A DNA stretch of 62,903 nucleotides, filler included, from Octopus bimaculoides (lineage: Eukaryota), in the NCBI RefSeq assembly GCF_001194135.2. It is 5 parts of 4 records of this genome, joined end to end, with 100 filler letters (N's around TTAATTAATTAA, not from the genome) between each part and the next. Parts side by side here need not be neighbours in the genome. Positions count along the whole stretch, not along the records: positions 15,287 to 27,825 come from NC_068985.1; 4 more parts are not named here. One strand, given 5' to 3'. Shown here piece after piece: positions 15,361-27,080 of this stretch. The position numbers and the translations under genes were made by a program. Position 1 is the first letter of the stretch. Each line of letters opens with the position of its first letter. A model generated the notes under the pieces. That model was not told where the DNA came from. It did not search any database and saw only the letters and a list, made by a program, of their open reading frames with translations.

Positions 15361-15649
15361 TGGTGGCTGGATTACGTCAAGAACGCGGAAGCTCCTGCTA
15401 AGATGATTCTGGTATGTCATGTATTCCAACATATAATCTAGAAAGTTGTTGTTATTGTTTAGCACCTTTGTCAGCCTGAGCCAACAGATTTCTTATAGTA
15501 AAGGCTTTTTTTTTTCTGTCGTGACCATCTAGTCTTTTCGTATCTCCTAGAATACATTATTCAATGTGTTCTTTTTTTTTTTTGTTTTTTTGTTTTTTGA
15601 GTCGGTATAATTTGACTTACGGGCGATTCAGCTAGTGTTTGTAGCAGGT
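15361..15649 (+). repeat. Dispersed repeat, diverged copy 1 (copy 2 at 17214-17488; partial relative at 25725-25830)
   Basis: Shared blocks ctgctaagat, atgtattccaacat, cctttgtca, ttctgtcgtgaccatc, gtcggtataatttgac and tagcaggt occur in the same order. Confidence 0.8.
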
Positions 15650-17075: not shown

Positions 17076-17213
17076 GTAGCTAACAATTAGTAATGAATAA
17101 ATTATAAAGAAACACTTCACCACATGCCCCTCTAACGAAAAAGGTAATCAGCTTAATAGAATTTCAGTATCGGAAATATAATAATCCTATAGTGAGAAAG
17201 TTAAATTTTAATG

Positions 17214-17488
17214 TGGTGGCTAGATGACGCTAAGAAGCTACTGCTAAGATAATTCTAGTACGTTATGTATTCCAACATGTATCATGGAAAGTTTCTGTTG
17301 CTATTGTTAAGCGCCTTTGTCAACCTGACTCAGCAGATTTCTATAGACAAAAGGTTTTTCTGTCGTGACCATCACATCTTTTTGCATCTCCGAGAATACA
17401 ATGTATTCTTTATCCAATGTGTTCTTTCTGTTTTTCTATGTCGGTATAATTTGACCTGCAAGTGATTCGGCTGATGTTTCTAGCAGGT
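17214..17488 (+). repeat. Dispersed repeat, copy 2 of 15361-15649
   Basis: Colinear shared blocks with 15361-15649. Confidence 0.8.
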
Positions 17489-18114: not shown

Positions 18115-18195
18115 TGATTTTCTCTTAAGTTTCAACTTTTAGCTTCTATTTTTTTCTGAATTTGTAGCGAACCAAAACATTTTCGATATTTAAAA

Positions 18196-19482
18196 ATGGT
18201 TCGCATTACAACACTTTCTGAATCCTTCCATTCAAAAGAAGGAAACAAAAATGAAGGAAAATCTGAGGAATCATATGTCTCATTCAATGCAGATTGGACA
18301 ATGATGCTTGAACTGAGTCCCGATGTTTTTCAAACATTGCAGACTATTTTTCACAAAAGTTTCGTTTCCAATTTTCCTTCTGACGAAAGTTTTACTTGGA
18401 GATCTATGGTAAACCGTATCTATAATAGACCGAAGGGAACAAAAATTGAGTGGAATAAACCTAAACGAATTTCTTCGTGTGGTCGTAAAACCCTCATAAA
18501 ATGGGTGAATGATCAATTACAGACGAAATTATTGGATATAGGAGAACTTTCTAGCGGTGTTCACTATTGCTTTTTATTAGATATTTTAGCCCCTAATATT
18601 ATTCATAAAAAGAAAATTAAATTTGAAAAGAAGGCTGAAGCATATGATTACAATTTTAAACTTTTGGAAAAAGCATTTTACGAACTGAAAATCGACAAAC
18701 TTATACCTAAAAAAATCAAAGATAAAAATTTGAAAGAAATTCTTATCTTCACAAATTGGCTTAAATCTTTCTTTGAAGCGAACTTAAATGACGACCTCCG
18801 CGAAGAGTTTCTCACAAACAATCAGGTATATTCATCAAGTATACTCAGTGATGCTTATGAAAGCGATACCGATATGCTAGAAAGACATGATTTAGAAAAC
18901 TCTAAGAGCAAATCAAAAGCTCATTCACAAAGTTCTGTCCTGATGCCACCTTTAAATACAGCTCTAATAAAATATGGTCACGGCGATACATCAGAAATTA
19001 GATATTTAAAAACGCAAAATCGTATCAAGCACGGTTTCGAAACTGAGAAATGTCATTCAACGATAGACCCCCAAACGACACCCAATTTCTTGCCACGGTT
19101 GATTAAACCGAAGCGGGTTGGCATGTACGGAAGAAAAACACTTATAAACTGGATCAGGAGAACTCTCGCTGTTGACATCAACGATTTGAATCAGTTGTCT
19201 GATGGTATTGTTTTTTGTCTTATAATGAACTATTTAGATCCAATAGTGCTACCGAGATACAAGATTAAATCCAAGTCAGATGCATCAGGTTTCCTACAAA
19301 ATTATCGTTTGCTCCAAGCCGCCTTCATCCACCACAAAATAGATAAAGTTATCCGAGTTAATAAACTCATTGCGTGTAACATGAAGGAAATTTTGATGTT
19401 TACAAATTGGTTAAAGGCTTTTCTAGAATACAATTTAAATCGAAACGAAGTAAAATCGTCGGATTCAACAGAAGATCGTTGA
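18196..19482 (+). CDS. Intronless EB1/MAPRE-like protein with two tandem calponin-homology domains (428 aa), lacking the EBH domain
   Basis: Uninterrupted 428-aa ORF with start context aaaATGG. Residues 96-196 (18481-18783) and 312-413 (19129-19434) each align by eye to the EB1 CH pattern (LLxWVNxxL..ELxSG..YC.LLD...KIKF...YxxNFKLL.KAF....IDK.I......W.K.FF..N). No coiled-coil/EBH segment or EEY/F tail follows; the ORF ends SSDSTEDR. Confidence 0.9.
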   Translation: MVRITTLSESFHSKEGNKNEGKSEESYVSFNADWTMMLELSPDVFQTLQTIFHKSFVSNFPSDESFTWRSMVNRIYNRPKGTKIEWNKPKRISSCGRKTLIKWVNDQLQTKLLDIGELSSGVHYCFLLDILAPNIIHKKKIKFEKKAEAYDYNFKLLEKAFYELKIDKLIPKKIKDKNLKEILIFTNWLKSFFEANLNDDLREEFLTNNQVYSSSILSDAYESDTDMLERHDLENSKSKSKAHSQSSVLMPPLNTALIKYGHGDTSEIRYLKTQNRIKHGFETEKCHSTIDPQTTPNFLPRLIKPKRVGMYGRKTLINWIRRTLAVDINDLNQLSDGIVFCLIMNYLDPIVLPRYKIKSKSDASGFLQNYRLLQAAFIHHKIDKVIRVNKLIACNMKEILMFTNWLKAFLEYNLNRNEVKSSDSTEDR

Positions 19483-19592: not shown

Positions 19593-20044
19593 CACACACA
19601 CACACACACACACAAACTCATATATGCGTATGCAAATATACACACTCGCACATGTATAAGTATGCTAGTGCATGCGATTAATCAAATTTTTTTGACACGG
19701 ATATTTAATATAGATGGTTCTATTTTCTGTCTTTAAGTTTCAGTTCTGGCCATGCTGAAACTTTGCATTATTCCCAATAGCTTGTGTTTAGGTCTTTGCT
19801 ATTTCAATAGTGAGTCAATGGAATTCGCTTTACCTATTACTAAGTAAAATTGGCTAAAGTTAGGGCTTGGAAAATAAAAATTCTGAGGCCTTCATCCTAT
19901 TCCTTATTTCTTTATGTAAATAATTAAATACCAGGCATTTTCTCACTGTAAGACTGTCTTAATAAGGCTGTTTTTATTAGATTTCACCTGATGCGATTTT
20001 AGCAGTTTAAGATGAAATCTTTCTTCGCTTTTATTTATTCAATA

Positions 20045-20268
20045 ATCCTTTCTACTACAGGCACAAGGCCTGAAATTTAGGGGAAGGGATAGTTGATTAC
20101 ATCAATCCCAGTACTCAACCGGTACTTATTTGATCGACCCCGAAAGGATGAAAGGCAAAGTCGACCTCGGCGGAATATGAACTCAGAATGTAAAGAGACG
20201 AAATACCGCTAAGTATTTCACTCGGCGTGCTAACGATTCTGCCAGCTCACCGCCTTTCTGCCTTTCTG
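20045..20268 (-). mobile_element. tRNA-derived SINE (family C) with probable 11-bp target-site duplication
   Basis: Minus-strand head ggcggtgagctggcagaatcgttagc and B-box-like gagttcatattcc. tttattcaata flanks both sides (20034-20044 and 20269-20279). Other copies are at 56608-56830 (+) and 31475-31770 (+, decayed). Confidence 0.85.
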
Positions 20269-20970: not shown

Positions 20971-21656
20971 CGTTGCATCGCTGAAAATTAATAAATAAGT
21001 ATTGTTTAATACCATTTTATTTGAGATTGCATGTCAAAACTAGAGCGATCATACAGGGTAAGCGTCATAATAGCCATTTAAAAAAATATCCATATATATG
21101 CAGGTATGGTCAATTTTGATTTATTTCTAGATAGTATGTTGCATACTNNNNNNNNNNNNNNNNNNNNNNNNNNNNNNNNNNNNNNNNNNNNNNNNNNNNN
21201 NNNNNNNNNNNNNNNNNNNNNNNNNNNNNNNNNNNNNNNNNNNNNNNTTTTTTTTTATTCGAACATTCTACATGTAACGAGAACAATAGGTATAAACAAT
21301 AACATAAAATTGAAATTTCACATCTAATCCATAACCTAGACTTATGTATTCTGAAAGATGACTTAAATATAGTTAATAAGCTTATACTCAATTCGATTAC
21401 CCTCAGAATTAAAAACAACACCACGAGATAAGCACAATGGGTCTGCTGCACCGCTATTATCCTATGGTTCAACAGTATAGAAAATAAAACTTATATCTCT
21501 TTTCTTGAGTTAGCTGGAATTCAGGCAAACTTTTGCTACCCATATGATAGCAGTCGAGCGATTATCATAAACGTCGGGAAGGAGTACTTTTTTATGACAA
21601 AACATTCTGGTTCAAAACTGCTGCGTTATTTACGCAATGAGTACTTTGAATGTTAG

Positions 21657-22042
21657 GTGGAGGCGCAATGACCCAGTGGTTAGGGCAGTGGACTCGCGGT
21701 CATAGGATCGCGGTTTCGATTCCCAGACCGGGCTTTGTGAGTGTTTATTGAGCGAAAACACCTAAAGCTCCACGAGGCTCCGGCAGGGGATGGTGGCGAA
21801 CCCTGCTGAACTCTTTCACCACAACTTTCTCTCACTCTTACTTCCTGTTTCTGTTGTGCCTGTAATTCAAAAGGGTCAGCCTTGTCACACTGTGTCATGC
21901 TGAATATCCCCGAGAACTACATTAAGGGTACACGTGTCTGTGGAGTGCTCAGCCACTTGCACGTTAATTTCACGAGCAGGCTGTTCCGTTGATCGAATCA
22001 ACTGGAACCCTCGACGTCGTAAGCGACGGAGTCCCAACAACA
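21657..22042 (+). mobile_element. Full-length tRNA-derived SINE (family A) with (CAA)n tail and 13-bp target-site duplication
   Basis: tRNA-like head gtggaggcgcaatgacccagtggttag...ggtttcgattccc. actttgaatgtta is at 21643-21655 and 22043-22055. Near-identical copies are at 54175 and 60853. Confidence 0.92.
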
Positions 22043-22648: not shown

Positions 22649-23193
22649 AGCAACGTTGGTGACGCTGTTTTAGCTACATGGATCGTAATCAGAAATCATT
22701 GTACGAAGGACGTCGTAATTAAGCTTACTCTTAATGCAATTCATCGTATATAAAAAGATATGGTATAGCAAATGATACGGCTGAAGATATAAAAATTACA
22801 AAATCTGCTATACAAAACTAAATGGCTTTAAGTGGGTACTCGTATGAAATAGTAAAATACTGCAGCTGCGAAGGTTAGACATTTCTTATTGTTACTGTAT
22901 TATAAACAAGAATACACACATACGCATGCACACACATACGCAATATACATACATACATATATACATACATATGTGTGTGTATGTGGTGTGTATTGTATAT
23001 GTATACGTATGTGTGTATATATGTGTATGTATGCATGTATATTGCGTATGCTTTGAATATATATATGTATATATTCTTACACATGTACAAAAGCATATAT
23101 AATTTATGTATGTATGTATATATATATACGTGTGTGTGTGTGTATATACACACACACACATATATATATAGTTACACACACACACACACGTTC

Positions 23194-23252
<59 letters not shown>

Positions 23253-24229
23253 NNNNNNNNNNNNNNNNNNNNNNNNNNNNNNNNNNNNNNNNNNNNNNNN
23301 NNNNNNNNNNNNNNNNNNNNNNNNNNNNNNNNNNNNNNNNNNNNNNNNNNNNNNNNNNNNNNNNNACACATATATAAATGAGAGAGTGAGGGTGCTTGGG
23401 GGAAATAAAACAAACAAGGAAAATACAAAATATATAATATTAATTTGACACTTGAAGAAGGAGAAAAGAACCGAAAAGTTTTACTGTCAGATGGATGAGG
23501 TTAACGTTCAGAAATGTAGCCCTTCATCAAAGAAAAGTAGAGAAGAAAAGACAATTGAAAGAAGAATGAGAAGAGATAGAAAACTCCAGGGAACAAAACT
23601 GCTCATCCAATGATTATTAGATGGAAGAGATGTGAAATGAATAGTAAGTGGAAGAGATAGACAGAGGAAGTGAAGTACAGCTATTAGAGCGATTGTATAG
23701 GGAGGTTGCAAAGGAAGTCAATAGGTGAAACCATTTGCATACATGTGTGTATTTGTATGTATGCGTGTATGTGTGTGTGTGTGGTGTGTATGTACCTATA
23801 AGTGTTTATGTGCAGGTGTGCTTCTTGTACGAATATACATGCATGAGCGGGAAAAGGCATATGTTATATGTGTTTTTGTTGTGTGAGTGTATATGTTATG
23901 TGTAAGATAAGGTATGCTTGTAGTGCGTCGCGAAACATTGTAGGGTCACTGTATAGATGCTATAAATGGAACAGCGTAGTGTGTGTATGAGAGAGAGAGA
24001 GAGAGACAGACAGAGACAGACAGACAGACAGACAGGCAGACAGGCAGACAGACAGACAGATAGACAGACAGAAACAGAAAGAGCTCGCTTGCGAGAGAGT
24101 GTTTTTAAACGCACGTATTTTTTGAGTTGAGAGCCGCAAAATAAGTTGTTGTTTACGTTGTAACCGTGATGCTTCAGTACTACAGTATAATGGTATAATA
24201 GATGGAGAGGTGCAAAGCTATACTGGTAG

Positions 24230-24960
24230 ATGAGTTGATAGGGATGAATCACTAATAATCCAGGACTTTTTAGTCTGACGTCCCGAAGATGCTCGCGATA
24301 TCGAGCGGCCAATCTTCAACTAGTCTTGTCTGCATACAGTTGACAGAATAATCGATATGTTGATTAGATACAATTTGATGCAAAAGATGCAATATGTTGA
24401 TGTTGACTCGAACAATTCGATGCGATAGATGAGGTTTTGGTATTTCACGTGAACTAGTCAGTAATATAGGGAGTTTTGCTCGGTCCTGTCGGTGTGGTAT
24501 TCGGGATGCATGGACCTCTACTGCAGCTGACCAGGTGAAGAACCAGGGTTGAAAAAGTGGAAAGGAGGACTTGGAGATCAGCAAGTCAAGCAGGTGGCGA
24601 GGCAAAACGAAACCAGTCAGTGTGGAAAGTGATAGGTTCTGTAAAAGTTTGATAGTTGTCATAGAGACTTTAGTTTCTCTATCACCTTTCAACATAATTA
24701 TATATGAAGAGACAATAGAACAATTAAAAATATAATAAAAAGGTTTTATTTATGATGATGCTTGGTTTCATAATTCCTATCATTCAGCTTAGCAGTCGCT
24801 GATTAGGTTGTAGTTTGGTAATGGAAGGTTAAGGGCTTCCTTGATGCCTGCCAGAGAAACAAGTAGCTATCACCATCGAAGGCATCGAGGTGAAGTGGTA
24901 ATTCGTTGAGGAGCGAGGAGTTGTCACGTAGGTCTGAGCTCAACTACCTAACAAAGTGAA
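24230..24960 (-). mobile_element. Possible decayed BEL/Pao LTR-retrotransposon integrase C-terminus
   Basis: Minus strand reads EDWPLDIASIFGTSD then, after a frameshift, RDVRLKSPGLLVIHPYQLIY (cf. WPLgRI..l.pG.DG.VR.V.lkT..G.l.RP.qkl.pL). No LTR identified. Confidence 0.35.
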
Positions 24961-24984
24961 ACTCTCTCTTTAAGAACCAGTTTT

Positions 24985-25150
24985 ACTACGCATGCGCACT
25001 CGAGTGGCTTCCGGTGGTGAAGTCCCCTGCGCATGCGCAGAATAGTACTTCCTCAATGGCGGCTATAATTTCGCGCCACTACAGTTCCGATTGGAGGAAT
25101 CAGAAGTACCGCGGGACAGTGCGGTAACTAACCATAATTGAGCACACGTG
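24985..25150. promoter_or_regulatory. CpG-rich housekeeping-type promoter motif cluster (possibly bidirectional)
   Basis: NRF1-like ACGCATGCGCA 24988-24998 and TGCGCATGCGCA 25028-25039; ETS CTTCCGGT 25008-25015; YY1-like AATGGCGGC 25055-25063; E2F TTTCGCGCC 25069-25077; ACTACAGTTCC 25078-25088; ATTGG 25090-25094; CACGTG 25145-25150. Confidence 0.7.
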
Positions 25151-25829
25151 TTATCGAACGCTTTCTTGCTATGACCTTTTCTTATTTTTACCAAGGACCA
25201 CATTATATAAAGTTCGTCAGTTTTTAAGTCAGTGGGTAAGAATTTAGGGAACATGACTATTATTTCTAGCAAGTTGATTAGTCGTGGTTGTCTTTATACA
25301 AACAGGCGATGCTCCGGTATGACTTTGGCCCTAATGGCTAAAACATACCAAAGAACAGGTCACTGCTCTAAATAAGGCATGTGCAGAACCCAAATACCTT
25401 GTCAGATGGATGCAGCTAACGTTTCTCTTCAACAGCAACAAGCTGGAAGTGGCAAGAAAAAAAAACTTACAGGGTAGAATTTCGCAACGTCCGACGTTCC
25501 GGAGAAGGAGGAGAAAGATTGGGATCGGTGGTTATTAAAGAGGCTGGAATATGGACACAATATTGGTAACGAGACGAAGTGGAAGGACAAGTGAATTGTG
25601 AAGTGTTGTGGAGGTAAGACGAGACCGGTCAGCTCCAAAAATAGGCTACGTTAGAAAAGACAAAGAGTAAGAGGGAGAGAGCGAGAGAGAGAGAGACCTT
25701 AGACGGCATTGTTGAAAAGTCACTTTATCTCGAGTATTGTGTATCTAAGACTACAACATCCAATGTGTCATCCCTTTCAAAACGATCGGGTGTAATTTTA
25801 GGGAGATTTGGCTAGTTCTTGAAGGTCGA

Positions 25830-27080
25830 GTGAGTATGAAGTGAGAGCATTTGGAGAATATGCAATTGGAAATAAGATTGGAAGTGTTCTTTCATAATTT
25901 CCTCCAGAAACTAGAGAAGAACTCTTTCCGTAAGGCTACAGAATGGACTGTGTTGGTGAACGTCTTCATGTCATTCAGTCAAGCGGTCTTGGATATTTGT
26001 GTGAGTAGCTGCTGCAGCACCGTTTCAAAATGGTGCGGAAGTACTTCATTATATGTATTGCATATTTCACTTGCTTTTTGTAAAAAGTTAGTCGTTGTTA
26101 AGGGATGAAGTATTTTCTGCCTTTGAAGAAGGCTAGAGTTTGTGTTGCATTCATCATATTTACAATGTTGAGGATGTACATTCGCCAAGATCATCAGTGA
26201 TGAATAGACATAGCATTTGTAGCGACTTCGAGGTCTCTACTTGTGTGTTATTCATGTATAAGTCTCAGTGATGAGGTATGGTTACATTTTCTTAGAATAT
26301 GTAGGAATTATACTTTTGTGGTCTATTGAAGGAGTCAACTTTGCTGTGACTTCATTGGATGGTGTTTTCGAAGTCTTTGTTGATAGATACCGTACAGGTT
26401 TGGTGTAAGGTGTCTCCAGGTTGCATATAGATGCCGCTTAGTGTGAAATATTAGGGAGGAATGAAAAGTGGTTCCACCTACAAAGAACTGGGTATCGGCA
26501 AGCCGTAGAAAGTGAGGGCAAAACTGAACCTTGAGGCTCACCAGAGATGATAAAATGTGAATGTTGGGGAAATTCCACCAGAACACACCACGATTGAATC
26601 TTCTGATAGAGAACCACCGATCCAGGAGTAAATATATTAATTTCTCATAAAATATTTAACAAGCAATCACCGCGTACTAACAATTTTTAATACACGTTTG
26701 AATGTGTAGAAACGTATTAAGTGTAGAAGTACGCATCGTAATTTTGAATCATAGTTCTGCTTAGCTTTAATAATTTAATATCAATTGGAGAAGCTCTCCC
26801 CAGTGTCAGTAAATACTTTGTTTTCTGATTTCATTAAATACAAATAGTTGTTCCTGTTTAATTCTAAAGGACCGGGAGATGTCTATCACTAAAGAGGTGC
26901 AGTTACACCGAAACACTGGTGTCTGATTTTACCTAGAGCGTGTGTGGTGTTTGCACACTGGGTAAGGTCAATCTCTGAGACAATATCCAATAGGGAAAAG
27001 CTATTTGTGCGTTCGAATGTACAGGAACGTGCTAACAATGGATGTACAAATGGTTGTTTTTTGAGCCTATAATAATTAAA
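25830..27080 (-). mobile_element. Decayed Penelope-like RT fragments
   Basis: Minus-strand traces: WNFPNIH (cf. SLYTNIP), TPNLYGIYQQRL, NVHP, LHPLTTTNFLQKASEICN (cf. HP...RA.rIC), and near 26880-26940 VKSDTSVSV*LHLFSDRH (cf. YRKPTDT..YLHFSS.HP). Confidence 0.3.

What the first reader, a model, noticed from the sequence alone, without database searches (positions are those of the whole stretch)
18196..19482. Single-chain 'double-headed' EB1-like protein: two tandem EB-type CH domains, no EBH dimerisation domain
Seen: an intact intronless 428-aa ORF amid decayed TEs, with two EB1-type CH domains (aa 96-196 and 312-413) joined by a roughly 115-aa S/D/E/K-rich linker, an N-terminal extension of about 95 aa, and nothing after the second CH. 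Established: canonical EB/MAPRE proteins have one CH, a coiled-coil/EBH domain that dimerises and binds SxIP partners, and often an EEY/F tail for CAP-Gly proteins. Inference: this protein could supply two microtubule-binding heads in cis without dimerising or recruiting SxIP/CAP-Gly partners. It might act as a lattice binder, cross-linker or bundler, or compete with true EB1, possibly in a lineage- or tissue-specific role such as sperm flagellum/manchette or axons. I know of no named EB family member with this architecture, but cannot search to confirm.
Basis: partly seen in the sequence, partly recalled or inferred. Interest (0 to 1): 0.85.

Follow-up and report, generated by a model that had tools for sequence, protein, structure and literature searches.

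The report
Octopus double-headed EB1-like microtubule protein gene
This is a real, conserved octopus gene for a protein with two EB1-type microtubule-binding heads on one chain and no dimerising or partner-recruiting tail, an undescribed variant of a well-known family whose function has not been tested.

Summary
Window 18196-19482 (+) is an uninterrupted 428-codon ORF. It carries two EB-type CH domains (aa 95-198 and 312-413), a roughly 105-aa linker predicted to be disordered, an N-terminal extension of about 90 aa, and only 15 aa after CH2. There is no EBH/EB1 C-terminal domain, no EEY tail and no SxIP motif.

It is a working gene, not a chance ORF or retro-pseudogene. Full-length orthologues with the same layout exist in O. 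vulgaris, O. sinensis, another octopod, Argonauta hians and a more distant unidentified lineage that is probably a cephalopod. dN/dS is 0.2-0.3 overall and 0.08-0.2 in the CH domains. The CDS has no indels, whereas the flanks are full of them.

Both CH domains fall in a 98%-bootstrap clade that also contains cephalopod single-CH paralogues. In this clade the canonical KGKFQDN tubulin-contact loop (EB1 K100/Q102) is replaced by a conserved DKNLKEI-type loop. The protein is strongly basic (net +14), whereas EB1 is acidic.

Best reading, by inference: a single-chain bivalent microtubule binder that favours the lattice or bundles microtubules and does not recruit +TIPs. A second, independent two-CH family exists in cephalopods. 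I found no paper describing either. Rated a new variant of a known kind, of moderate interest.

The parts
18196..19482 (+). Complete single-exon CDS of 428 aa plus stop: a tandem EB-type CH protein.
   Evidence: ORF. Identical to database protein P0156. Orthologues are 93%, 90%, 52% and 36% identical. dN/dS is 0.18-0.31. The CDS has 0 gaps against O. vulgaris and the Logan octopod, while the flanks have 50-112 gap columns.
18150..18167 (+). Polypyrimidine tract plus AG (ttttttctgaatttgtag), a possible 3' splice acceptor of a 5'-UTR intron, ending 28 nt before the ATG.
   Evidence: Read directly from the sequence. A similar tgtag lies just upstream of the ATG in O. vulgaris, the Logan octopod and Argonauta. 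Its use is not tested.
18196..18456 (+). N-terminal extension, aa 1-87, with one conserved amphipathic helix (about aa 42-57) and otherwise low-confidence structure.
   Evidence: dN/dS is 0.12-0.43. AF2 helix 42-57 has pLDDT about 57 and the rest is below 50. No Pfam hit. Not a decayed CH domain. No significant similarity to the N-terminus of the distant orthologue P0004.
18457..18489 (+). Basic pre-CH1 motif KPKRISSCGRK (aa 88-98).
   Evidence: K88, P89, K90, R91, C95, R97 and K98 are invariant in all six orthologues. The same motif precedes CH2 and the CH domain of the single-CH paralogues.
18478..18789 (+). CH1 (aa 95-198), an EB-type calponin-homology domain.
   Evidence: Pfam CH scores 32.5 bits for this half alone. 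EB3/EB1 CH domains match at E 1e-19. AF2 pLDDT is 70-90. The best structural matches of the whole model, which align a single CH-sized stretch, are EB1/EB3 CH domains with TM 0.75-0.84 and rmsd 1.1-2 A. dN/dS is 0.08-0.19.
18721..18741 (+). Remodelled loop in CH1, DKNLKEI (aa 176-182), in place of EB1 K98-G-K100-F-Q102-D-N104.
   Evidence: Column counts over 143 canonical EB CH domains give K98 105/143, K/R100 118/143, Q102 116/143 and N104 135/143. This clade has D/A/E/G, N/S, K/R and I/L at those positions. The EB1 K100E/Q102E mutant is reported to have impaired microtubule binding (PMC5042579).
18790..19104 (+). Inter-CH linker (aa 199-303): Ser/Thr-rich, mildly acidic, predicted disordered.
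   Evidence: AF2 pLDDT is below 50 for aa 199-299. Length is conserved at 97-114 aa across orthologues while the sequence diverges, with dN/dS 0.29-0.78.
19105..19137 (+). Basic pre-CH2 motif KPKRVGMYGRK (aa 304-314).
   Evidence: P305, K306, R307, G312, R313 and K314 are invariant in all six orthologues.
19129..19434 (+). CH2 (aa 312-413), an EB-type calponin-homology domain.
   Evidence: Pfam CH scores 33.5 bits for this half alone. Bim1 and Mal3 CH domains match at E 1e-11 and 3e-7. AF2 pLDDT is 75-90. dN/dS is 0.14-0.22.
19372..19392 (+). Remodelled loop in CH2, ACNMKEI (aa 393-399), equivalent to EB1 K98-N104.
   Evidence: Same column analysis as for CH1. N395, K397, E398 and I399 are invariant in all orthologues.
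19435..19482 (+). Short C-terminal tail (aa 414-428, NRNEVKSSDSTEDR) plus the TGA stop; no EBH domain and no EEY/F.
   Evidence: Translation. All orthologues stop 9-15 aa after CH2. tblastn with 87 EBH-bearing EB proteins finds no EBH-like coding sequence in the rest of the piece.

Best explanation
SHOWN: this is a functional, single-exon protein-coding gene. The window is almost certainly from Octopus bimaculoides, because its protein is identical to a UniRef/EukProt entry. The gene belongs to a clade of EB-derived CH-domain genes found here only in cephalopod or cephalopod-like sources. The protein has two EB-fold CH domains in one chain, separated by a flexible spacer of about 105 aa. It has no coiled-coil/EBH domain, no EEY/F tail and no SxIP motif. 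The layout from CH1 through the linker to CH2 is conserved from Octopus to Argonauta and to a more distant lineage, under purifying selection on both heads.

INFERRED MECHANISM: the two heads in cis replace the bivalency that canonical EBs get from coiled-coil dimerisation. One polypeptide could therefore engage two EB-type sites. These could be on one microtubule (sites are 8 nm apart; the linker's rms reach is about 8 nm and its contour length about 40 nm), or on two neighbouring microtubules, which would bundle them.

Three features point to binding along the lattice rather than comet-like tracking of the GTP cap. The protein lacks the acidic C-terminal half that makes EBs avoid the lattice. 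It is strongly basic (net +14, with each head plus its KPKR..GRK leader at +9 to +11). The K100/Q102 contact loop is rewritten in both heads.

Without an EBH domain or EEY tail it cannot recruit SxIP or CAP-Gly partners, so it would act as a structural MAP, stabilising or bundling. The Ser-rich linker and the conserved N-terminal helix are candidate regulatory or partner sites. A role in a specialised stable microtubule array, such as the spermatid manchette as for Drosophila Mst27D, is plausible but untested.
For: Gene reality:
- ORF, with a chance expectation of about 7e-10.
- Orthologues of 415-444 aa with the same layout.
- dN/dS of 0.18-0.31, Fisher p from 9e-6 to 5e-20.
- CDS 95.8% identical with 0 gaps against O. 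vulgaris, versus flanks at 85-92% with 50-71 gap columns.

EB-type heads:
- Pfam and PDB sequence search.
- AF2 pLDDT 70-90 for both domains.
- The top 14 Foldseek hits are all EB1/EB3/Bim1/Mal3 CH domains.
- 87 of 157 nearest library proteins carry an EBH domain.

No EBH:
-, with the positive control.

Clade and loop:
- 98% bootstrap for the clade.
- Loop substitutions and retained K89, R17, W23, N74, W110 and K112.

Charge:
-.

Published precedents:
- Two CH domains are needed for robust microtubule binding. Replacing the acidic EB C-terminus with a neutral zipper gives strong lattice binding (PMC3154886).
- The EB1 K100E/Q102E mutant has impaired microtubule binding (PMC5042579).
- Drosophila Mst27D is a retroposed, testis-specific EB paralogue without EBH similarity. 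Its CH domain binds along microtubules only when dimerised, and it bundles them (PMC10359004).
Against: There is no direct evidence for microtubule binding, for a monomeric state, or for expression or tissue. No RNA data could be reached, and the Logan contigs are collinear with the genome so they do not tell RNA from DNA. The rewritten K98-N104 loop could abolish microtubule binding rather than retune it. AF2 used only 6 sequences, and pTM is 0.34, so the relation between the two heads is unknown. The N-terminal region might mediate oligomerisation. The charge argument is qualitative. Internal branching of the clade is unresolved: CH1 monophyly gets 1% bootstrap and CH2 monophyly 60%. Descent of the tandem from a single ancestor therefore rests mainly on collinearity.
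Confidence: 0.5

Rival explanations
1. It is an autonomous plus-end tracker that carries no cargo. The tandem heads would recognise growing ends as an EB dimer does. Without EBH or EEY the protein would occupy EB sites and displace or dilute endogenous EB1 and its +TIP network, acting as a natural dominant-negative or tuner of microtubule dynamics.
For: Both heads have the EB fold and keep many conserved EB surface residues: R17, W23, K60, N74, K89, W110 and K112. CH plus linker, artificially dimerised, still tracks tips at low concentration (PMC3154886). Lys at the Q102 position keeps a polar or positive side chain.
Against: K98, K100, Q102 and N104 are among the most conserved positions of canonical EBs, and all are replaced in both heads. 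EB1 K100E/Q102E is reported to have impaired binding. The lack of an acidic C-terminus together with high positive charge predicts lattice binding. Mst27D, a diverged EB-type CH protein, binds along the lattice.
Confidence: 0.2
2. The CH domains have been repurposed and no longer bind microtubules. The protein would use two EB-fold modules as interaction domains for another ligand (actin, membrane or other proteins), or as a scaffold.
For: The tubulin-contact loop is rewritten in every member of the clade and then conserved. This suggests a new, selected specificity. CH folds bind diverse ligands (general knowledge; review PMC7240100, listed but not read).
Against: The most conserved basic and aromatic EB surface positions are retained. 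Added basic leaders (KPKR..GRK) and high pI suit the acidic microtubule surface. There is no sequence or structural similarity to actin-binding tandem CH domains: Foldseek aligns them only at rmsd about 15 A.
Confidence: 0.15
3. The ORF is only part of a larger gene. Additional coding exons, for example a coiled coil or EBH domain, would be spliced on upstream or downstream, so the protein is not really EBH-less.
For: A plausible splice acceptor lies 28 nt upstream of the ATG, so at least a 5' exon may exist. No RNA evidence was available.
Against: All six orthologues start with a conserved Met-Val/Met-Arg or Met-Val-Leu and have in-frame stops 2-21 codons upstream. All terminate 9-15 aa after CH2. 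No EBH-like coding sequence lies elsewhere in the window piece (about 3 kb upstream and 8 kb downstream of the ORF), and only one sub-threshold opposite-strand hit (E 0.02, Argonauta) appears within the flanks of the orthologous and paralogous loci. The database gene models for O. sinensis, O. vulgaris and Argonauta give the same single-exon CDS.
Confidence: 0.05
4. It is a non-functional retro-pseudogene or a chance ORF in AT-rich repeat-laden DNA.
For: It is intronless, surrounded by repeats and microsatellites, and no expression data are available.
Against: The chance expectation for the ORF is about 7e-10. The frame is intact in at least six lineages with dS up to about 1.2. dN/dS is 0.2-0.3 with p below 1e-5. 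The CDS has zero indels while the flanks carry many.
Confidence: 0.02

Closest known systems
Canonical EB/MAPRE proteins (EB1/EB3, Bim1, Mal3)
   Same: Both heads are EB-type CH domains by sequence (E 1e-19 to 3e-7), and the model's best structural matches are EB CH domains (TM 0.75-0.84, rmsd 1-2 A). Many conserved surface residues are retained. The functional unit has two heads.
   Different: The two heads lie in one polypeptide instead of a coiled-coil homodimer. There is no EBH domain, acidic C-terminus, EEY/F tail or SxIP-binding capacity. The K98/K100/Q102/N104 loop is replaced in both heads. The protein is basic (pI 9.3) whereas EB1 has pI 5.0. There is an extra N-terminal region of about 90 aa. 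The CDS is intronless.
Drosophila Mst27D and other testis-specific EB1 paralogues (CG15306, CG32371, CG2955)
   Same: These are lineage-specific, diverged EB-family genes. Mst27D arose by retroposition. Similarity to EB1 is confined to the CH domain. Its CH domain binds along the microtubule lattice only when bivalent, and it bundles microtubules (PMC10359004). This is the closest functional analogue for the proposed mechanism.
   Different: Mst27D has one CH domain and dimerises through a C-terminal coiled coil that also binds Nup358. The octopus protein has two CH domains in cis and no C-terminal region. There is no orthology, since the insect and cephalopod expansions are independent. Expression of the octopus gene is unknown.
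Engineered EB-NL-LZ (EB CH plus linker fused to a GCN4 zipper)
   Same: Two EB CH domains are held together without the acidic EBH or tail. Experimentally this gives strong, long-lived lattice binding and promotes assembly (PMC3154886). It is the best experimental proxy for what a tail-less two-headed EB does.
   Different: It is artificial, a parallel dimer with the basic EB linker and a wild-type K100/Q102 loop. The octopus protein is a single chain with a mildly acidic linker and a remodelled loop.
Second cephalopod two-CH EB-like family (O. bimaculoides LOC128247397 = P0159, Argonauta P0015, P0160)
   Same: It has two EB-type CH domains in one chain, an intronless ORF and no Pfam EBH domain, and is found in cephalopods.
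   Different: It belongs to a different CH lineage: 25-33% identical to this gene's heads, closer to canonical EB, and not in the 98% clade. The first CH starts at the N-terminus. The linker is about 70 aa. A C-terminal extension of 110-160 aa follows. The FK-type loop is only partly changed.
Paired-CH microtubule binders (Ndc80-Nuf2, HAUS6-HAUS7, ASPM) and tandem-CH actin-binding domains (alpha-actinin, fimbrin, spectrin)
   Same: They share the concept of two CH domains cooperating on one cytoskeletal filament (general knowledge; papers listed).
   Different: They are different CH subfamilies. Foldseek aligns the actin-binding tandems to the model only at rmsd about 15 A, and no sequence hits were found. 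Their CH pairs pack tightly, whereas here the heads are separated by a disordered linker of about 105 aa.

Membership tests
EB/MAPRE family (canonical) | N-terminal EB-type CH domain | tested here: met
   Two copies are present. Pfam CH scores above threshold for each half. EB3/EB1/Bim1/Mal3 are the only PDB sequence hits. The top 14 Foldseek hits are all EB CH domains.
EB/MAPRE family (canonical) | Coiled coil plus EBH domain (Pfam PF03271) that dimerises and binds SxIP partners | tested here: not met
   No PF03271 hit at E<=1. The human EB1 control hits it at 9.7e-19. phmmer with the EB1 C-terminus is negative for this protein and all its orthologues. No EBH-like coding sequence lies in the flanks. 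Only 15 aa follow CH2.
EB/MAPRE family (canonical) | Acidic C-terminal tail ending in EEY/F (CAP-Gly binding) | tested here: not met
   The protein ends ...KSSDSTEDR. Orthologues end ...SSEKF...SAKSL and ...SKQTL.
EB/MAPRE family (canonical) | Conserved tubulin-contact loop K98-G-K100-F-Q102-D-N104 | tested here: not met
   The loop is replaced by DKNLKEI in CH1 and ACNMKEI in CH2. The canonical residues are present in 105-135 of 143 reference CH domains.
EB/MAPRE family (canonical) | Autonomous tracking of growing microtubule plus ends | not testable with these tools
   Requires TIRF reconstitution or live imaging.
Cephalopod 'KPKR..CGRK' EB-derived CH clade (defined here) | CH domain within the 98%-bootstrap clade, basic KPKRxxxCGRK leader, N-x-K/R-[ED/A]-[IL]-L loop, intronless ORF, no EBH | tested here: met
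   NJ tree of 163 CH domains, alignments, column analysis, and single-ORF genes in L001, L002, L006, L009 and L010.
Tandem-CH actin-binding domain (alpha-actinin/spectrin/fimbrin type) | Type-1 plus type-2 CH pair packed into a compact ABD | tested here: not met
   No sequence hits to ABD proteins. Foldseek alignments to ABDs have rmsd 14-18 A. The heads are separated by a disordered linker.
CAMSAP CH (PF11971) and SPEF1/CLAMP CH_2 (PF06294) | Score above the Pfam gathering threshold (27 bits) | tested here: not met
   CAMSAP_CH scores 21.1 bits and CH_2 13.4 bits, both below 27. Human EB1 gives similar sub-threshold scores.
Mst27D-like bundling EB paralogues (functional class) | Bivalent EB-type CH protein that binds along the microtubule lattice and bundles microtubules; testis-specific | not testable with these tools
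   Bivalency in cis is shown by the sequence. Lattice binding, bundling and tissue specificity need experiments or RNA-seq. No expression data were retrievable.

The most novel reading that the evidence does not exclude
Coleoid cephalopods evolved a private toolkit of intronless, EBH-less EB-derived microtubule-binding proteins. At least two of these families independently solved the need for two heads by tandem duplication in one chain rather than by coiled-coil dimerisation. This gene would be a natural single-chain bivalent EB with a rewritten nucleotide-sensing loop. It would read a lattice state different from the GTP cap, and it would build or stabilise a cephalopod-specific stable microtubule array such as the spermatid manchette or axonal bundles.
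Probability: 0.3. Interest if true: 0.7.

Novelty: new variant of a known kind. Interest (0 to 1): 0.55.

Why it matters
EB proteins are the master adaptors of growing microtubule ends. Their two heads, acidic tail and K100/Q102 loop are what give them tip specificity. This protein is a natural experiment that keeps the EB head and changes everything else. It is bivalent in cis, has no partner-binding module, has opposite net charge and carries a conserved alternative contact loop.

If it binds microtubules, it would show what the EB fold does when freed from tip tracking, and which lattice state the altered loop reads. It would also add a cephalopod case, alongside the Drosophila testis paralogues, of EB genes being recruited as structural MAPs. 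On the practical side, current database names ('MAPRE1') overstate its similarity to EB1.

Tried and rejected
1. Hidden EBH: Pfam at E<=1, phmmer with the EB1 C-terminus, and tblastn of 87 EBH regions against the window piece and 10 fetched loci. Nothing found except one E 0.02 hit on the opposite strand in Argonauta.

2. N-terminal region as a decayed third CH domain: hmmsearch with --max and hhalign give probability 0.6%. Rejected.

3. N-terminal homology between the octopod and P0004 clades: BLASTP finds none. I therefore claim conservation only of the CH1-linker-CH2 core across that distance.

4. An eyeballed EBH-like remnant at the C-terminus of the second two-CH family: not supported by BLASTP or Pfam. 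Dropped.

5. Expression evidence: searches for gene, protein and run accessions in papers and in the supplements of an O. sinensis gonad transcriptome paper found nothing. The Logan contigs (L003-5, L009) are collinear with the genome and end in repeats, so they cannot be told apart as RNA or DNA.

6. Literature on tandem EB-type CH proteins or cephalopod EB genes: nothing found.

7. SxIP motif scan: none in the Octopus proteins.

8. TE protein domains in flanking ORFs: none. tRNA and Rfam scans: none.

9. The sigma-70 promoter/terminator scan is irrelevant for a eukaryotic locus and gave fewer promoter-like sites than the shuffles.

10. The first Biopython NJ run timed out and was replaced by a numpy NJ.

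11. The organism behind ERZ21867824 and ERR3431203 (P0004 and P0157) could not be identified with the available tools.
Full report
OBSERVATION. The ORF at 18196-19482 (+) is exactly as described: ATG to TGA, 428 codons. It stands out in the 12.5-kb piece. The other ORFs of 80 aa or more are short, run through microsatellites, or run through N gaps. Stops make up 7% of random codons at this base composition, so about 7e-10 stop-free runs of 428 codons are expected by chance.

Pfam's CH model (PF00307) matches twice, at aa 97-186 and 313-402. Each half scores above the gathering threshold when scanned alone. Against all PDB sequences, aa 95-198 matches the EB3 and EB1 CH domains (E about 1e-19) and aa 312-411 matches Bim1 and Mal3 (E 1e-11 and 3e-7). 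Nothing outside the EB family appears.

No EB1 C-terminal motif (PF03271) is found even at E<=1. A human EB1 control hits that model at 1e-18, so the negative result is meaningful. The protein ends 15 residues after CH2 with ...STEDR.

IS IT A REAL GENE? Yes.

Orthologues:
- A search of 5.8 billion proteins returned full-length, collinear orthologues in O. vulgaris (93%, auto-named 'MAPRE1') and an unnamed octopod from SRA runs (90%). It also returned one in Argonauta hians (52%, 415 aa).
- The O. vulgaris cluster also holds an O. sinensis RefSeq protein ('uncharacterized LOC118763668') and a UniRef/EukProt entry identical to the window protein. The window is therefore very probably O. bimaculoides.
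- An exhaustive HMMER scan of 1.84 billion cluster representatives added P0004 (443 aa). A profile search added P0157 (444 aa). Both have the same CH1-linker-CH2 layout and are 35-37% identical.
- P0004 and P0157 come from an unidentified, more distant lineage. The same assembly also carries the other cephalopod-type paralogues, so it is most likely a cephalopod.

Selection:
- The window and the O. vulgaris locus are collinear over the whole piece.
- Nei-Gojobori dN/dS is 0.28, 0.21 and 0.29 against O. vulgaris, the unnamed octopod and Argonauta (dS about 1.2 for Argonauta).
- By region, dN/dS is 0.08-0.19 in CH1 and 0.14-0.22 in CH2. It is 0.12-0.43 in the N-terminal region and 0.3-0.8 in the linker.
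- The excess of synonymous change is significant, with Fisher p from 9e-6 to 5e-20.
- The CDS has no gaps at all against O. vulgaris or the unnamed octopod. The adjacent 0.7-2 kb flanks carry 50-112 gap columns and are 74-92% identical, against 92-96% for the CDS.
- dS against O. vulgaris (0.10) matches flank divergence, so the constraint acts on the protein.

IS ANYTHING SPLICED ON?
- All orthologues begin with a conserved Met and have in-frame stops 2-21 codons upstream.
- All stop 9-15 residues after CH2.
- tblastn with the EBH regions of 87 EB proteins finds nothing in the rest of the piece. The only hit in the fetched loci is one E 0.02 match on the opposite strand in Argonauta.
- The gene models held for O. 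vulgaris, O. sinensis and Argonauta give the same single-exon CDS.
- A pyrimidine tract plus AG 28 nt before the ATG, echoed in the other octopods, suggests a 5'-UTR intron. I could not test this.

WHAT KIND OF CH DOMAINS?
- AlphaFold2, with only a 6-sequence alignment, gives pLDDT 70-90 for aa 90-198 and 301-419.
- pLDDT is below 50 for aa 1-40, 59-83 and 199-299. pTM is 0.34, meaning two folded heads on a flexible tether with no confident mutual packing.
- The 14 best Foldseek matches in the PDB are all EB1, EB3, Bim1 or Mal3 CH domains (TM 0.75-0.84, rmsd 1.1-2.0 A). Actin-binding tandem CH domains align only at rmsd about 15 A.
- In a neighbour-joining tree of 163 EB-type CH domains, CH1 and CH2 of this family form a clade with 98% bootstrap support. 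The clade also contains the single CH domain of a third group of cephalopod proteins: O. sinensis XP_036356439, P0006 and P0158, each with a long acidic tail.
- Within that clade, CH1, CH2 and the single-CH domains are about equidistant (39-46% identity) and their order is unresolved. The duplication that made the tandem is therefore old. It predates the Octopus-Argonauta split and, judging by collinearity with P0004 (E 1e-71), the split from the more distant lineage.

WHAT DISTINGUISHES THE HEADS?
I compared alignment columns in 143 other EB-type CH domains with those of this clade.
- Retained positions: R17, W23, K60, N74, K89, W110 and K112 (human EB1 numbering).
- Replaced positions: in the loop K98-G-K100-F-Q102-D-N104, K98 becomes D/A/E/G, K100 becomes N (S in one single-CH paralogue), Q102 becomes K (R in the single-CH paralogues) and N104 becomes I/L. 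The new loop is itself conserved: N, K and I are invariant in all orthologues and Glu is nearly so, in both heads.
- K100 and Q102 are the residues mutated to make an EB1 with impaired microtubule binding (PMC5042579, citing the cryo-EM work).
- Each head is preceded by an invariant basic leader, KPKR-x3-(C/Y)GRK.
- Each leader-plus-head unit has net charge +9 to +11 and the whole protein +14 (pI 9.3). Human EB1 is -8 (pI 5.0), with a -16 C-terminal half.
- The linker keeps its length (97-114 aa) while its sequence drifts. For a random coil this gives an rms reach of about 8 nm and a contour length of about 40 nm (polymer scaling from general knowledge).
- There is no SxIP motif in the Octopus proteins.

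MECHANISM (INFERENCE).
Published work shows three relevant things:
- A single EB CH-linker binds microtubules weakly, and two heads are needed for robust binding (PMC3154886).
- The acidic C-terminal domain is what suppresses lattice binding. Replacing it with a neutral zipper produces strong, long-lived lattice decoration (PMC3154886).
- Drosophila Mst27D is a retroposed, testis-specific EB paralogue that resembles EB1 only in its CH domain. It binds along microtubules only when bivalent and bundles them into the spermatid dense complex (PMC10359004).

The octopus protein supplies bivalency in cis, lacks any acidic C-terminal half, is highly basic and has a rewritten K100/Q102 loop. The best-supported reading is therefore a single-chain, two-headed structural MAP that binds along the lattice and may cross-link microtubules. 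It would have no ability to recruit SxIP or CAP-Gly partners. I put this at about 0.5.

Rivals:
- A cargo-less tip tracker or EB1 competitor (0.2).
- Heads repurposed for a non-microtubule ligand (0.15).
- A larger gene with unseen exons (0.05).
- A pseudogene or chance ORF (0.02 or less).

None of the functional alternatives can be separated without experiments. I could find no expression data.

COMPARISON AND NOVELTY.
The protein fails three of the four sequence-level defining features of canonical EBs: EBH, EEY/F tail and contact loop. It should not be called MAPRE1. It is an EB-derived CH protein.

The architecture is not a singleton. Cephalopods have a second two-CH family (O. bimaculoides LOC128247397 at 441 aa, Argonauta P0015, P0160). 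Its heads lie outside the 98% clade and closer to canonical EB. They also have several single-CH, EBH-less paralogues.

Among the 150 best representatives worldwide, the only multi-CH protein outside these cephalopod or cephalopod-like sources is a low-quality partial diatom model.

Six literature searches found no description of a natural tandem EB-type CH protein or of cephalopod EB paralogues. The library is limited to open-access text.

I rate it a new variant of a known kind. The sequences are already public but uncharacterised and in part misnamed. Interest is moderate (0.55). It is a clean, conserved natural experiment on the EB head, but it is a variation on a familiar theme and function is still inferred.

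Noticed in passing
window 25044-25232 (+): A weak CH-like fragment with an in-frame stop, resembling the N-terminal half of a canonical EB CH domain (STS..SRH..W..IE..C...LFP...KV.F). tblastn E is 0.03-0.07 for many non-independent EB queries. It may be a decayed EB-like fragment about 5.5 kb downstream of the gene, or chance.
   Followed up: partly
window 15361-15649 and 17213-17488: A direct repeat of about 290 bp, 73-82% identical, with copies 1.84 kb apart upstream of the gene. It could be two copies of a short interspersed element or the ends of a larger element. The Logan contigs lose collinearity with the window near here (about 17107-17440).
   Followed up: no
window 20042-20256: A SINE-like repeat about 0.6 kb downstream of the stop codon. 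Extra copies lie elsewhere in the O. vulgaris locus (L002 6750-7100). The independent Logan contigs all break inside it.
   Followed up: partly
window 21656-21891: A repeat that occurs in both orientations about 9 kb upstream of the gene in O. vulgaris (L002 1009-1467) but is missing from the syntenic position there. This looks like an insertion polymorphism between the two Octopus species.
   Followed up: no
window 23287-26786: GC skew is strongly and persistently positive (+0.1 to +0.47) for about 3.5 kb, unlike the rest of the piece. Unexplained.
   Followed up: no
window 19595-19615 and 22875-23450: (CA)n and (TA)n microsatellites and N gaps (about 21200 and about 23300). The 'ORFs' listed there are artefacts of simple repeats.
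   Followed up: no
L007 10001-11287 (Argonauta hians); P0159 (O. bimaculoides LOC128247397); P0160: A second, separately derived family of intronless proteins with two EB-type CH domains in one chain (428-488 aa). The linker is about 70 aa, and there is a C-terminal extension of 110-160 aa with no detectable EBH.
   Followed up: partly
L010 5001-7076 (ERZ21867824); P0005 (O. sinensis XP_036356439); P0006: Single-CH relatives from the same 98% clade, each a single ORF of 494-691 aa. The CH domain is at the N-terminus behind the same PKRxxECGRK leader, followed by a long acidic, low-complexity tail. These may represent the ancestral single-head form.
   Followed up: partly
P0162-P0168 (O. bimaculoides, O. 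vulgaris, Argonauta): Several further octopod proteins auto-named MAPRE1/2/3(-like), 299-695 aa, have one EB-type CH domain and no Pfam EB1 C-terminal domain. This suggests a sizeable EBH-less EB expansion in cephalopods, reminiscent of the Drosophila testis paralogues.
   Followed up: partly
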